The translations under genes and the position numbers were made by a program. The notes under the pieces are model-generated. The model was not told where the DNA came from. It saw only the letters and a list, made by a program, of their open reading frames with translations, and searched no databases. A stretch of DNA of 63,169 nucleotides, counting the filler, from Reticulomyxa filosa (taxonomy: Eukaryota > Protista > Foraminifera): NCBI GenBank assembly GCA_000512085.1. It is 17 parts of 17 records of this genome, joined end to end, with 100 filler letters (N's around TTAATTAATTAA, not from the genome) between each part and the next. Parts side by side here need not be neighbours in the genome. Positions count along the whole stretch, not along the records: positions 36,654 to 45,452 come from ASPP01009218.1; 16 more parts are not named here. One strand, written 5' to 3'. This document shows positions 40,326 to 45,452 of the stretch, one piece after another. Numbering within the stretch: the first letter of the stretch is position 1; each line of letters opens with the position of its first letter.

Positions 40326-41592
40326 TCATCCCCACAACCCAATCATGTTGTCATTTGACGAAGATAAAATTTTGTCACCACGTGGGGAAATATCCACTTG
40401 TGAAATATATGCAGAATGCGCATTTAATTTTTGTATTATCTTTCCTGATTTTACGTCCCACCATCTAATTGTCTTATCATTCGAACAAGATACAATCGAT
40501 CGACCATCAGGTAAATACCTGACATCCCTTACTACACTTAAATGTCCTTCCAGTTTTTTTACTATCTTTTTTTGTTGCAATATCCCATATTCGAATTGTT
40601 TTATCGCCTGAACAGGACACAATATATGCACAGTCTGGAGATGGCTGTGCATGTAATACAGCGTTTTGATGTCCTCTTAATATATGTAATTGTCTACCAG
40701 ATTTCAAATCCCATATGCAAATGGTTGCATCATAAGAGCATGACACAATTGTCTGGCCATCCGGTGAAAATTGCACATGACTTACTGTTTGTGTATGTCC
40801 TCGTAGTATATTCAATTGTTTTCCAGATTGCAAATCCCATAAACGAATTGTTTTATCTTCAGATCCAGACACAAGTGTGCTACCATCTGCTGAAAATTGA
40901 ACTGTGTTGACAACACTAGAATGTCCTGTTAATACTTTTACTTCAAGTGCTGATGCTACATCCCAAAGCCGAATTGTAGTGTCATATGAAGATGATATAA
41001 TCATTTTGCCATCGGGTGAAAATTGTGCATCATTTACCCATCTGGAATGTCCCATGAATTTTTGTATTTCTTTTCCTGATGCTACGTTCCATATTCTAAC
41101 TGTATTGTCAAACGACGCTGAAACAATTGTACTACCATCTGGAGAAAATTTTGCACTTCTCACGTTGTCAGAATGTCCTTGAAAGACTTTCAATAATTTA
41201 AAGTGTTTGGCCTGAATACATCATTGTCTTTTTGAAAAGCATAATTAAAAAATTTATGACAAACATAGATAATACTACTACTAAACATATCTTGCAATAA
41301 TTTTGTCAAATTCATCAATCCATCCAAAAGCAACTGATAATGATGTTATCCAATTGTTTAATATCAAGCCAACTTCTTCATCTGTCTTTTTTTCAGATTG
41401 TCAGTAGTAATTTATTTTACATTTGTTTGTGGCATTTACCGAGTATGTTGGTTGTATGTTGCTCTGGTCAAAGGTTTGCAAAATACAAGGTGTGTTTGTT
41501 TCAGTATTCCCAAGTGACTGCTCTTGTTCAGAATTAATTTCATTCGGTACTAATAGCATGGCTGTTGATACTGTAATCTCATTACTTGTCAT
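40326..41592 (-). CDS. WD40-repeat protein (highly regular repeats) with an N-terminal GWIDEFDK module; frameshift in an A-run near 40560
   Basis: Repeated GH..V..FSPDG..IVS.S.D.TIR.WD. Three exons: 41439-41592, 41287-41385 and 40326-41211. The frameshift may be a homopolymer error. Confidence 0.9.
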
Positions 41593-41849: not shown

Positions 41850-42810
41850 AAAAACGCAAAGTCAAAAAACTAAATTTAAACATTAAAATTTTTAAAGGAA
41901 ACAAATCTTTTGAAGTTTGAAGGATTTGACCCTCCAATTTCTCAATCTCAATGTGTTGTACACAAAGACAGATACTCATTTGTGGACGTTTTAAAGAAGG
42001 AAACTGTTGTCCTTATCATCGCTCAATAACGAATACAGGTTTACCTGTAAGTGTCCAAGTAGTATGGCGTTCGAGTGAAACTGATAGATAATAATAACAA
42101 AGACATCAATGAAATTAATTTGCTGCCTTTGGTGGGATATAAAAAGAAACAATATGCATTATGACGAAATATATAGTGTAGAGTAATAACAATGAAATGA
42201 ATAAATCAAAGAAATTGGCTCCTTTCACGGACACTCACAATCATCAAATTGTCATTGGGAGATCAAGGTAATTGTCGGTAGTGTATGCAATGATTGGTGG
42301 AAGCAATAATTATTTGCCATTTATCAGTTATCTTAGTATGCTTGATTAAATATATTTCAATTTATTAAACATAATAATTTACCAATTAATGCTTATATAA
42401 TTATCATTGCTTTATATCAAAGTTAGAAAATAGACAAGGACAAGAAATGATTAAACAAATGAAGAAAAAAATAAACAAAATTATCAAATGATGTTGTTTT
42501 GTTCAAGACATGATTATCAATTGAATAACAACACTTTTCAATTTCATCAGCTATCTGTGATGATATTACAGCATTAAACTATATCATATTGCCTTTTGGT
42601 TGAACTGATTTATTTGGTTCTGTTTCATAATCACAAGTATTCAATTTAAGAAAACAATTGATGACATTTCAAAACATTTTACACAGTCCATTATGATTGT
42701 ATTGCAATGCTGAGTGAATACAACAATATATACATCATCGGAGGACAAAAGGATAAAAAGATAATATTAACTCATATGAAGACAAAAGTGTGATCATTCA
42801 CTGAGCGATT
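41850..42810 (+). pseudogene. Kelch-like propeller pseudogene (same family as 56799..58077)
   Basis: Colinear remnants SQCVVH, AMIGGSNNYL, GQEMIK, NTFQFHQL and IHIIGGQKDK..HMKTKV with many indels. Confidence 0.85.
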
Positions 42811-45204
42811 ATTTTTTTTATCAAATACAAATAAGTTTTCATTACGTATGTTCACACTTCAATAATTTCCTAACTGTATCACTATTTGCTATTTTCTTGC
42901 TTTTTTTTTCTAAGAAAGACAACAACTATTTAACTACTTTTTTCATAGCACACTGATTTAAGAATTCGATTCAATGACATTTTACTAAAGTTTATACTGT
43001 TCTCAAAACTTCAACAGCAACCAACGAATTGCAGTACTTCACTCGTGCTTCACTTGCGTTCGTCATGTCGGGTTAATTCTTTTCGCAAGTACATATTCCT
43101 AAACTTTTCCACATTTTCTTTTCTCTTCAAAATTTTTTGTCTATCTTTACTTTAGCATATATTTCCTGCACTTTTGTGACAAGCGCTTCACAAGTTCATA
43201 TTGTTAAAAAATAATTTTAAAAATAAGTACAATTTACAAAAATAGGTAAATGCTATCAATATCAATTTATCAATATCACGAAAGGCAAAAGACATATTGT
43301 ACAAGCATGAACGTAAGTGTGTTGCTTGATAGAATTCGGCTGCTTCGATAAAGCTGACACCATATCTGTTATATTTGTGAGTTCTGTGCAAATGGTGATA
43401 ATATTGTTGTCGAATATATATTTGTATGTAACCTACAATTTTTCAATGATTTATAATTTATTCTAAATTATAAATCATACTTAATATGATAGCTACAACT
43501 TTTAGTTTGTTGCAAAATGAAAAAAACAATGTCACTAACTTGTTGCGATATTTTAATCGTTGACAGATTGCGCATAGCATTGTTTTAATATTCAATTTAT
43601 TGAATATAGTTTATAGTCAATGTGTTAGTATCAGCGTCTAGTATAACTCCAACTTGCTCGTAATATGCGCTTACGATACTTTGTCAAACTTTCATTCAAA
43701 CATTTGCATATTCGTAACTTTATGCAACATCAATGAATTATTCAATACATATCAGTTAATATAGTACATATATGTAAATATAAATATAATATATAAAAAT
43801 TCTGTAACTGTTTTAAATATTAATTTGTGTGAGTTTATGTTTAATCCACAATATTAGAATAATCATTAACTTGTGCAAGATCAACAGCTTTTTTTTTACT
43901 AGATAGTTAATTTTTTATATTTATTATTTATTGTGGAAAAAAAGGTAGAATTTGAATAAACTTGTATTGTTTCAGATTAAACTAATCTTTCTTAAAAGAA
44001 AATTCACAGCAAATTTTTTCACAAAAATTTTCTTCAAATAAAAAAATATGTAAAATTCCTCAGTCGTTACAACACCATAACGTCTGTACTGCTTGCTCTA
44101 ACTAACCGTTAATTTAATCAATTTCTTAATTTAATTTAAATAATAATTAATTACCTTTTTTCTTTTAAAACCGAACCTTTGAATATATCGAATAATTACA
44201 TTCAGCGTAAAGTATATCAAATACAATAATTTTTACTTTGTGCAAAGAAAAGTTTAAACTTGTAAATATTTTCTTTACTGTAAAAAAATATAAAAAATTG
44301 TGAAATGCTGTGTTAGATACAGACATGAGCAATGAAACAGTTCATCCGCCAAACAACCTTCAAATTTCAAAAAGTAACAGCTGTAATCATAAAATGTTTT
44401 TCTTTTTTAATATTTTTTTTTTTCAATAATATTCAAATTTTGCAAATCTATGTGTTAAGGAGTATGATCAAAAAGTAAAAGAGAATTATGTCAACAAAGA
44501 TGAAGTGTTCAAAAAAAGATCTTTTTATCATAAGACTGTTTTAAAAACAAAATAATATCAAAAATGAAATGATATTGTATGTATTTATTTCTCATCTTTC
44601 AATAGAATTGTTTTATTTCCAAGATTGTGTTCGTGATATATTGAATTGATCAATGTTCCTTTGGTAATTGTTTTTTGTACATTTTCTTTGGTTTTTTCCT
44701 TTAGTAGAATCGACTTTTACATTGTTTAATTTCATTAATTTTGTTAAGTGCATTTATTGGTTTTTCAACTTTTGCACATTGCATTTTTGTTTGTTTCATT
44801 TAGCATTTTCTTTTTTATTTTAATATTTATGTTGTCATTTATGTTACCTATGCTGGTATTGATATTTTTTGTTGTTTGTATTTCCTGTTCGCTTTGTCAT
44901 TGTTGCTGCCGTTATTTTCTTTTTTTTTATGTTAGGCATGCGTATATTATAGAATTCACTGTCCACGTGTGTTGAAAGATTGCAATTGACATTTAGTCAT
45001 ACGCGTTACTTGGAATCCTCGTTTGTTATGTAGTCATTACAATATTACATTGGAACAATATCTTAATTTACATCTTCTTATTCATTCAATTTTGGTTCCT
45101 CTTTGTCTACATTTATATAAATCATCTTGATTGATTGTCCATTTGTTATTTTGATTTTTTTCATTTTGTCGTATTATTGTCAATTTGTGCTAAATGGACA
45201 AATT

Positions 45205-45452
45205 CATAACCGGATTGTCGTATATATGAAAATGGCAATGTTGGAACCATCACACGAAAATTGTATTCTGTTTATACAATCCGACAACTGAAGTTATTTG
45301 CTAGACGAAATATCACACGTTAGAATCATGTAATCCCATGAACATGAGACAGTTATCATCAGCGATATTCTTACAAAATGTAAATGGCATCCTAAAGATG
45401 AAGACGCTCTTCTGCCACGTCCCACATTTGAATTGTATTATCTTCTGGACAT
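45205..45452 (-). pseudogene. WD40-repeat pseudogene fragment
   Basis: EDNTIQMWDV, VSCSWD, IQFSCDGS and TTIRL, with stops. Confidence 0.65.

What the first reader, a model, noticed from the sequence alone, without database searches (positions are those of the whole stretch)
41287..41385. A 33-codon phase-0 exon module shared by two unrelated propeller families: candidate new adaptor 'box'
Seen: in the WD40 gene, TDEEVGLILNNWITSLSVAFGWIDEFDKIIARY is exactly one 99-nt exon with phase-0 introns on both sides. The Kelch-like gene has a separate exon (56799-56906) starting in the same register, SKNEIKFIIQYCVRTLKIKLGWIDDFDKIIMKY; 13 of 33 residues are identical with no gaps. Known: short helical F-box and SOCS-box modules couple WD40/Kelch substrate receptors to cullin-RING ligases, and such families expand by birth-and-death. 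Inference: this is a lineage-specific, exon-shuffled helix-loop-helix tag that docks many propellers onto a common partner, possibly an undescribed ubiquitin-ligase receptor or innate-recognition system.
Basis: partly seen in the sequence, partly recalled or inferred. Interest (0 to 1): 0.85.

Follow-up and report, generated by a model that had tools for sequence, protein, structure and literature searches.

The report
Unnamed helical tag on foraminiferan propellers
The giant freshwater amoeba Reticulomyxa carries an undescribed 33-residue two-helix tag, encoded by its own small exon, on hundreds of WD40 and Kelch propeller proteins; it probably docks them onto a shared partner such as a ubiquitin-ligase adaptor, but no partner has been shown.

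Summary
The piece is Reticulomyxa filosa contig ASPP01009218.1. Exon 41287-41385 (-) encodes a 33-residue motif with phase-0 splice sites, just before a seven-blade WD40 exon. A profile finds it in 192 protein clusters (50% identity); all 36 hits checked are R. filosa. In 17 genomic copies, 15 keep a phase-0 acceptor and 13 a phase-0 donor. It sits before two distinct WD40 subfamilies, after Kelch domains, and between Kelch and WD40. It has no Pfam or PDB sequence match, dN/dS is about 0.4, and it fails the F-box, BC/SOCS-box, LisH and H-box patterns. In context AlphaFold gives a low-confidence helix-loop-helix. The only solved chains aligned over all of it are DCAF5 and WDR33, which bind DDB1-type clefts: a weak hint of a DCAF-like docking tag (about 35%). 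Lone-exon shuffling between unrelated families is only partly supported: Kelch-box-WD40 fusions link the families, so movement of a box+WD40 cassette and later truncation explains the Kelch copies. No RNA or partner evidence. This copy lacks the conserved Arg14 and its WD40 exon has a homopolymer frameshift.

The parts
41287..41385 (-). 99-nt exon encoding the 33-residue helical module (two predicted amphipathic helices, about columns 2-15 and 21-33); this copy has Thr in place of the family's Arg14
41440..41592 (-). probable first exon, 51 codons, low-complexity N-terminal tail with no Pfam match; the start agrees with the NCBI gene model
41386..41439 (-). predicted 54-nt phase-0 intron upstream of the module (GT...AG, purine-rich acceptor as in other copies); a phase-1 alternative 41420-41382 is not excluded
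41212..41286 (-). predicted 75-nt phase-0 intron downstream of the module (GT...CAG, with in-frame stops)
40326..41211 (-). last exon, about seven WD40 repeats (886 nt, one base over a whole number of codons)
40567..40573 (-). A7 run at or near which the WD40 reading frame shifts by +1: a homopolymer sequencing error or a real pseudogene lesion; not resolved
   Evidence: no reads decide it

Best explanation
Shown: the exon encodes a conserved, unannotated 33-residue module of R. filosa, found on at least about 190 clusters of fast-diversifying WD40 and Kelch proteins, kept as one phase-0 exon and constrained by selection. Inferred: it is two amphipathic helices that fold on binding a shared partner, so the variable propeller picks targets and the module docks it on a common machine. 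The likeliest named machine is a DDB1-family adaptor, with the module working like the helix-loop-helix of DCAF substrate receptors of CUL4-type ubiquitin ligases. It spread mostly as part of a box+WD40 cassette joined at its upstream phase-0 intron to different N-terminal parts (short tail, Kelch, Kelch plus coiled coil, TRAF finger); Kelch-box-stop genes probably lost the WD40. That the module is real and constrained is about 90% likely, a shared docking role about 65%, and the DDB1-type partner is the stated confidence.
For: 192 clusters at E<=0.001. Near-invariant I8, W12, R14, I18, G21, W22, I23, F26, K28, Y33. Helical hydrophobic moments of 0.56 peaking at 96-100 degrees in both halves. 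dN/dS 0.41 over 15 copies. AlphaFold of a paralogue gives helix-loop-helix directly before the first WD40 strand with pLDDT 52-70 against 92-99 for the propeller, as expected of an element not fixed without its partner. Among the top 50 PDB representatives only WDR33 (6fuw_B, 6bly_B) and DCAF5 in DDB1 (8tl6_B) were aligned over the whole module. WDR33's N-terminal helices overlap those of DDB2 in DDB1 (PMC5760199). DCAF helix-loop-helix motifs have very low sequence similarity, so a missing sequence match is expected (PMC13061254). Cul4/DDB1 complexes are ancestral in eukaryotes while elongin complexes arose in animals and fungi (PMC2785787).
Against: No partner was tested and no multimer prediction was possible. 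The structural hint is weak: ranks 33, 39 and 50, rmsd 3.2-4.2 A, a low-confidence segment, and only first and last aligned residues are reported. The isolated 33-mer and the Atlas model of a Kelch-terminal copy are single straight helices. A recalled H-box pattern matches 0 of 148. A position after a Kelch domain is not usual for DCAFs (own knowledge). The three Kelch-terminal copies give dN/dS near 1.0, on few sites. DDB1 and CUL4 in R. filosa were not checked.
Confidence: 0.35

Rival explanations
1. LisH-like self-association tag: the two helices pair with the same module on another molecule, so family members form homo- and heterodimers that bring two propellers together, with no outside adaptor.
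For: Same length as LisH (about 33 residues; own knowledge). The first helix has the LisH-like hydrophobic spacing in 115 of 148 copies against 25 in shuffles. LisH occurs on WD40 and Kelch proteins such as LIS1, TBL1 and muskelin (own knowledge). Dimerisation would explain low confidence in a monomer model.
Against: The LisH core (Gly-aromatic turn followed by small residues) matches 0 of 148. No LisH Pfam hit for 46 members, no PDB sequence hit. The spacing match is generic for amphipathic helices. LisH normally lies tens of residues from the propeller (own knowledge).
Confidence: 0.2
2. Structural cap or linker without a common partner: an N-terminal helical appendage of an ancestral WD40 gene that packs on or spaces the propeller and was carried passively as the family multiplied; Kelch-terminal copies are recent leftovers.
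For: About 70% of hits have WD40 directly downstream. Kelch-terminal copies have dN/dS near 1.0 at dS 0.14, share intron ends with Kelch-box-WD40 genes and are interleaved with them on the tree. Predicted cyanobacterial ATPase-WD40 and kinase-WD40 proteins also align over this segment (rows 2-3); G-beta aligns from the second helix.
Against: The model does not pack the module confidently on the propeller. The module is at least as conserved as its partner domain in every class, Kelch-terminal included (0.66 vs 0.56, though hits were selected by the module). The Kelch exons themselves have dN/dS near 0.6. It is shared at about 49% identity by two WD40 subfamilies no more alike (37%) than unrelated WD40s.
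Confidence: 0.2
3. Docking tag for an undescribed, lineage-specific partner: a divergent cullin adaptor, or a G-gamma-like or signalling helix in a recognition system that also involves NACHT and TRAF proteins.
For: No match to any known box. Restricted to one lineage. Occurs with a TRAF finger (L005) and once with a NACHT-like domain (L008). Protists hold divergent cullins (PMC2785787).
Against: No positive evidence for any such partner. The NACHT fusion is a single case on a 1.3-kb contig without the 5' intron and may be a chimera.
Confidence: 0.15
4. Divergent SOCS/VHL-type or F-box-type box that binds Elongin C or Skp1.
For: Use at either end of a propeller recalls BC-box proteins such as KLHDC2/3 (own knowledge). 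The second helix has the hydrophobic spacing of a Cul2-box or first F-box helix with Ile in place of Pro (pattern from PMC13061254).
Against: BC-box 0/148, Cul5-box 0/148, Cul2-box 2/148 (chance 1.1), F-box start 0/148; prolines almost absent. No Pfam or PDB hit. No room for the later F-box helices. Elongin-cullin complexes are reported only for animals and fungi (the survey predates this genome).
Confidence: 0.1

Closest known systems
DCAF helix-loop-helix / H-box (DDB2, DCAF5, DCAF12; WDR33 N-terminus in CPSF160)
   Same: About 33-residue two-helix element directly before a WD40 propeller; poorly defined by sequence; weak whole-length structural overlap with DCAF5 and WDR33.
   Different: No sequence match; strongly conserved Trp12/Arg14/Gly-Trp-Ile/Phe26 signature; also found after Kelch domains; DDB1 binding untested.
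SOCS box and VHL (BC + Cul2) box receptors, e.g. WSB1, KLHDC2/3/10
   Same: Short helical tag at either end of WD40 or Kelch propellers in an expanded family.
   Different: Lacks the BC-box small residue and the cullin-box prolines.
F-box-WD40 and F-box-Kelch proteins
   Same: N-terminal helical tag on birth-and-death propeller families; decayed copies are common.
   Different: Two helices, no Leu-Pro start, directly abuts the propeller or a stop codon; no Pfam F-box hit.
LisH motif
   Same: Length and first-helix hydrophobic spacing; association with WD40 and Kelch proteins.
   Different: Core turn and second helix do not match; no Pfam hit.

Membership tests
F-box | Match to Pfam F-box or F-box-like models | tested here: not met
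   0 of 46 members
F-box | Leu-Pro-x-Glu start and three helices | tested here: not met
   0 of 148; two helices predicted
F-box | Binds Skp1 | not testable with these tools
   no multimer prediction or assay
SOCS/VHL box | BC-box pattern | tested here: not met
   0 of 148 (pattern from own knowledge)
SOCS/VHL box | Cul5-box or Cul2-box with proline | tested here: not met
   0 and 2 of 148, chance 0 and 1.1 (patterns from PMC13061254)
SOCS/VHL box | Binds Elongin B/C | not testable with these tools
   no assay
DCAF helix-loop-helix (H-box) | Helix-loop-helix next to a WD40 propeller | tested here: inconclusive
   predicted in context at pLDDT 52-70; single helix alone
DCAF helix-loop-helix (H-box) | Sequence likeness to known H-boxes | tested here: not met
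   no PDB hit for the profile; recalled pattern 0 of 148; H-boxes are weakly conserved, so this is a weak test
DCAF helix-loop-helix (H-box) | Structural overlap with a DDB1-bound receptor | tested here: inconclusive
   8tl6_B aligned 3-332, Z 36.7, rmsd 3.6, driven by the propeller
DCAF helix-loop-helix (H-box) | Binds the BPA-BPC cleft of DDB1 | not testable with these tools
   no multimer prediction or assay
LisH | Pfam LisH match and core turn pattern | tested here: not met
LisH | Homodimerises as a four-helix bundle | not testable with these tools
   monomer prediction only
Symmetric (phase 0-0) shuffled exon module | Conserved phase-0 introns at both ends | tested here: met
   15 of 17 acceptors, 13 of 17 donors, from genomic sequence; not confirmed by RNA
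Symmetric (phase 0-0) shuffled exon module | Moved on its own between unrelated genes | tested here: inconclusive
   Kelch copies explained by cassette fusion and truncation; presence on two distant WD40 subfamilies fits a move or an old shared origin

The most novel reading that the evidence does not exclude
The module is a new class of adaptor-binding box that couples hundreds of variable WD40 and Kelch receptors to an undescribed rhizarian cullin-RING ligase or non-self recognition machine in a giant multinucleate cell.
Probability: 0.2. Interest if true: 0.8.

Novelty: new variant of a known kind. Interest (0 to 1): 0.55.

Why it matters
R. filosa's large WD40 and Kelch expansions have no functional handle. 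A conserved tag common to both gives one, and a single cheap test: find what a 33-residue peptide binds. If the partner is DDB1, this would be a very large DCAF-like receptor expansion with, unusually, a sequence-definable helix-loop-helix and Kelch receptors. If the partner is new, it adds a class of ligase box from an understudied supergroup. The exon signature would also repair many gene models, which read through its flanking introns. Limits: one species so far, and no experimental support.

Tried and rejected
Pfam on the exon and on 46 members: nothing meaningful. PDB sequence search with two module profiles: chance hits only; a longer profile hit only through its WD40 strand. ESM Atlas features: no usable hit; by structure only generic long helices. 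Word-based homologue searches on the module found 1 and 3 proteins, all R. filosa. Sequencing runs: DNA only, low depth; one 237-nt contig matches 41426-41662 exactly; no splice or frameshift evidence. The 33-mer model was a single helix, so it was not fold-searched. Paper searches found no description of the motif; the R. filosa genome paper is not held. Rejected: chance similarity; a non-coding repeat (codon-position differences 0.41/0.22/0.49); a degenerate WD40 repeat (helical); an upstream Kelch exon in this gene (the only Kelch remnant is on the opposite strand). The spliced window protein was not joined for any search; exons were searched by reference and the database paralogue P0228 stood in for folding.

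Full report
Source and gene. A protein encoded in this piece is on record on Reticulomyxa filosa contig ASPP01009218.1, 8799 bp, the length of the piece. NCBI calls a 377-residue gene at window 41592-40326 on the minus strand. My reading has three exons: 41592-41440 (low-complexity tail), 41385-41287 (the module) and 41211-40326 (about seven WD40 repeats; Pfam WD40 E 5e-66 and 1.5e-18 on the two sides of a frameshift). The introns are 54 and 75 nt, both phase 0. The last exon is one base too long; the frame shifts at or near an A7 run at 40567-40573. This may be a homopolymer error or a real lesion. The only runs found are low-depth DNA and decide neither this nor the splicing.

The observation. 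The exon reads as quoted and has AG before it and GT after it. Among 17 genomic copies (this one and 16 on ten other R. filosa contigs), 12 have AG directly before column 1 and 3 have it one codon earlier. Twelve have GT directly after column 33 and one has it two codons later. Four Kelch genes have no downstream donor and run to a stop. Purine-rich acceptors like this one recur (L006, L007, L009).

The family. R. filosa WD40 proteins nearest to the WD40 exon carry the same motif. A seven-sequence profile scored 192 clusters at E<=0.001 among 1.84 billion representatives. Each cluster is a 50%-identity group, so the copy number is higher. All 36 of the top 150 whose source I checked are R. filosa; ranks 151-192 were not visible. 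Viral and metagenome contigs gave nothing. Conserved columns are I8 91%, W12 97%, R14 94%, I18 85%, G21 97%, W22 99%, I23 95%, F26 93%, K28 86%, Y33 93%. The window copy shares 13.5 of 33 residues with members on average and has Thr at the Arg14 column, so it is a divergent member. Differences fall least on second codon positions and dN/dS is 0.41 overall, 0.38-0.53 in the WD40-linked classes and 1.0 in three closely related Kelch-terminal copies (few sites; the Kelch exons themselves give about 0.6).

Architectures. Most hits are short tail-module-WD40. About 15 are Kelch-module-end and about 11 are Kelch-module-WD40, some with a coiled coil before the module. One has a TRAF finger upstream and one a NACHT-like domain. 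Many 'other' flanks are intron read-through in poor gene models. The WD40 partners fall into two subfamilies whose mutual identity (37%) equals that to unrelated WD40s (34-37%), while their modules share 16 of 33 residues. The window's WD40 belongs with the subfamily that is also fused to Kelch (49-51%).

How it spread. The three-part proteins weaken this. Kelch-module-stop and Kelch-module-WD40 genes are interleaved on a weakly resolved Kelch tree (4 changes; one origin not ruled out). L002 (stop) and L003 (WD40) share the last 13 bases of the upstream intron, and their Kelch exons are as close as those within either class. The stop genes differ at the donor position. The simplest history is a module+WD40 cassette joined to Kelch at the upstream phase-0 intron, then loss of the WD40; the direction is inferred, not shown. 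An independent move remains possible for the two WD40 subfamilies.

What it is structurally. No Pfam family matches 46 members and no PDB sequence matches the profile. Alone, AlphaFold makes one helix, as does the Atlas model of a Kelch-terminal copy. With the propeller (paralogue P0228, 44 sequences) it makes helix, five-residue loop, helix, ending four residues before the first strand, at pLDDT 52-70 against 92-99 for the propeller. Both halves are amphipathic. Fold searches are filled by the propeller. Of 50 PDB representatives, only WDR33 from CPSF160 complexes and DCAF5 bound to DDB1 were aligned over the whole module; beta-TrCP aligned from residue 18 and G-beta from 30. Predicted cyanobacterial ATPase-WD40 and kinase-WD40 models also span it. 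These overlaps involve a low-confidence segment and are leads only.

Mechanism. Shown: a conserved, exon-encoded, constrained module on many variable propellers. Inferred: it folds on a partner shared by the family (about 65%). For the partner I rank a DDB1-type cleft first (35%). The position and size fit DCAF helix-loop-helix motifs, which have little sequence similarity among themselves (PMC13061254). WDR33 and DDB2 use overlapping N-terminal helices in homologous clefts (PMC5760199). Cul4/DDB1 ligases are ancestral whereas elongin ligases are reported for animals and fungi (PMC2785787). Rivals are LisH-like self-association (20%), a passive cap or linker (20%), an undescribed partner (15%) and a divergent BC-box or F-box (10%). 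The pattern tests for BC-box, Cul2/Cul5-box, F-box, LisH core and H-box all fail, so it is filed under none of them.

Novelty and verdict. I found no description of the motif in the held literature; the genome paper itself is not held. It is best called a new variant of a known kind: a short helical docking tag on an expanded propeller-receptor family, not a member of any named box. The feature is real and testable; its function is not shown and it is known from one species. Interest 0.55.

Noticed in passing
window 41907-42798 (+): Decayed Kelch pseudogene with many stops and frameshifts, head-to-head with the WD40 gene; 67-72% DNA identity to Kelch exons of L002, L003 and L010; no module exon was found after it.
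   Followed up: partly
window 45081-45425 (-): Weak, broken WD40 fragment at the contig end.
   Followed up: no
L010 205-3729: Same head-to-head layout of a module-WD40 gene (-) and a Kelch gene (+) as in the window; module-bearing genes cluster, with six unselected copies in about 54 kb of fetched loci.
   Followed up: no
L004 about 1066-1164: Decayed module with stop codons, still flanked by AG and GT and followed by a WD40 start: evidence of birth-and-death turnover.
   Followed up: no
L008 110-1295: NACHT-like domain runs in frame into the module with no upstream intron; a recombinant gene or an assembly chimera.
   Followed up: no
window 36813-37355 (+): Intronless 180-residue gene with a helical start and an acidic low-complexity tail, GC about 50% against 30% around it; no Pfam match.
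   Followed up: no
window 38659-39823 (-): NCBI calls a 327-residue gene; its main frame has no Pfam match and the region has long open frames on both strands, so it is doubtful.
   Followed up: no
protein P0041: An R. filosa gene model that reads the module in the wrong frame; many others read through its introns, which hides the motif from annotation.
   Followed up: no
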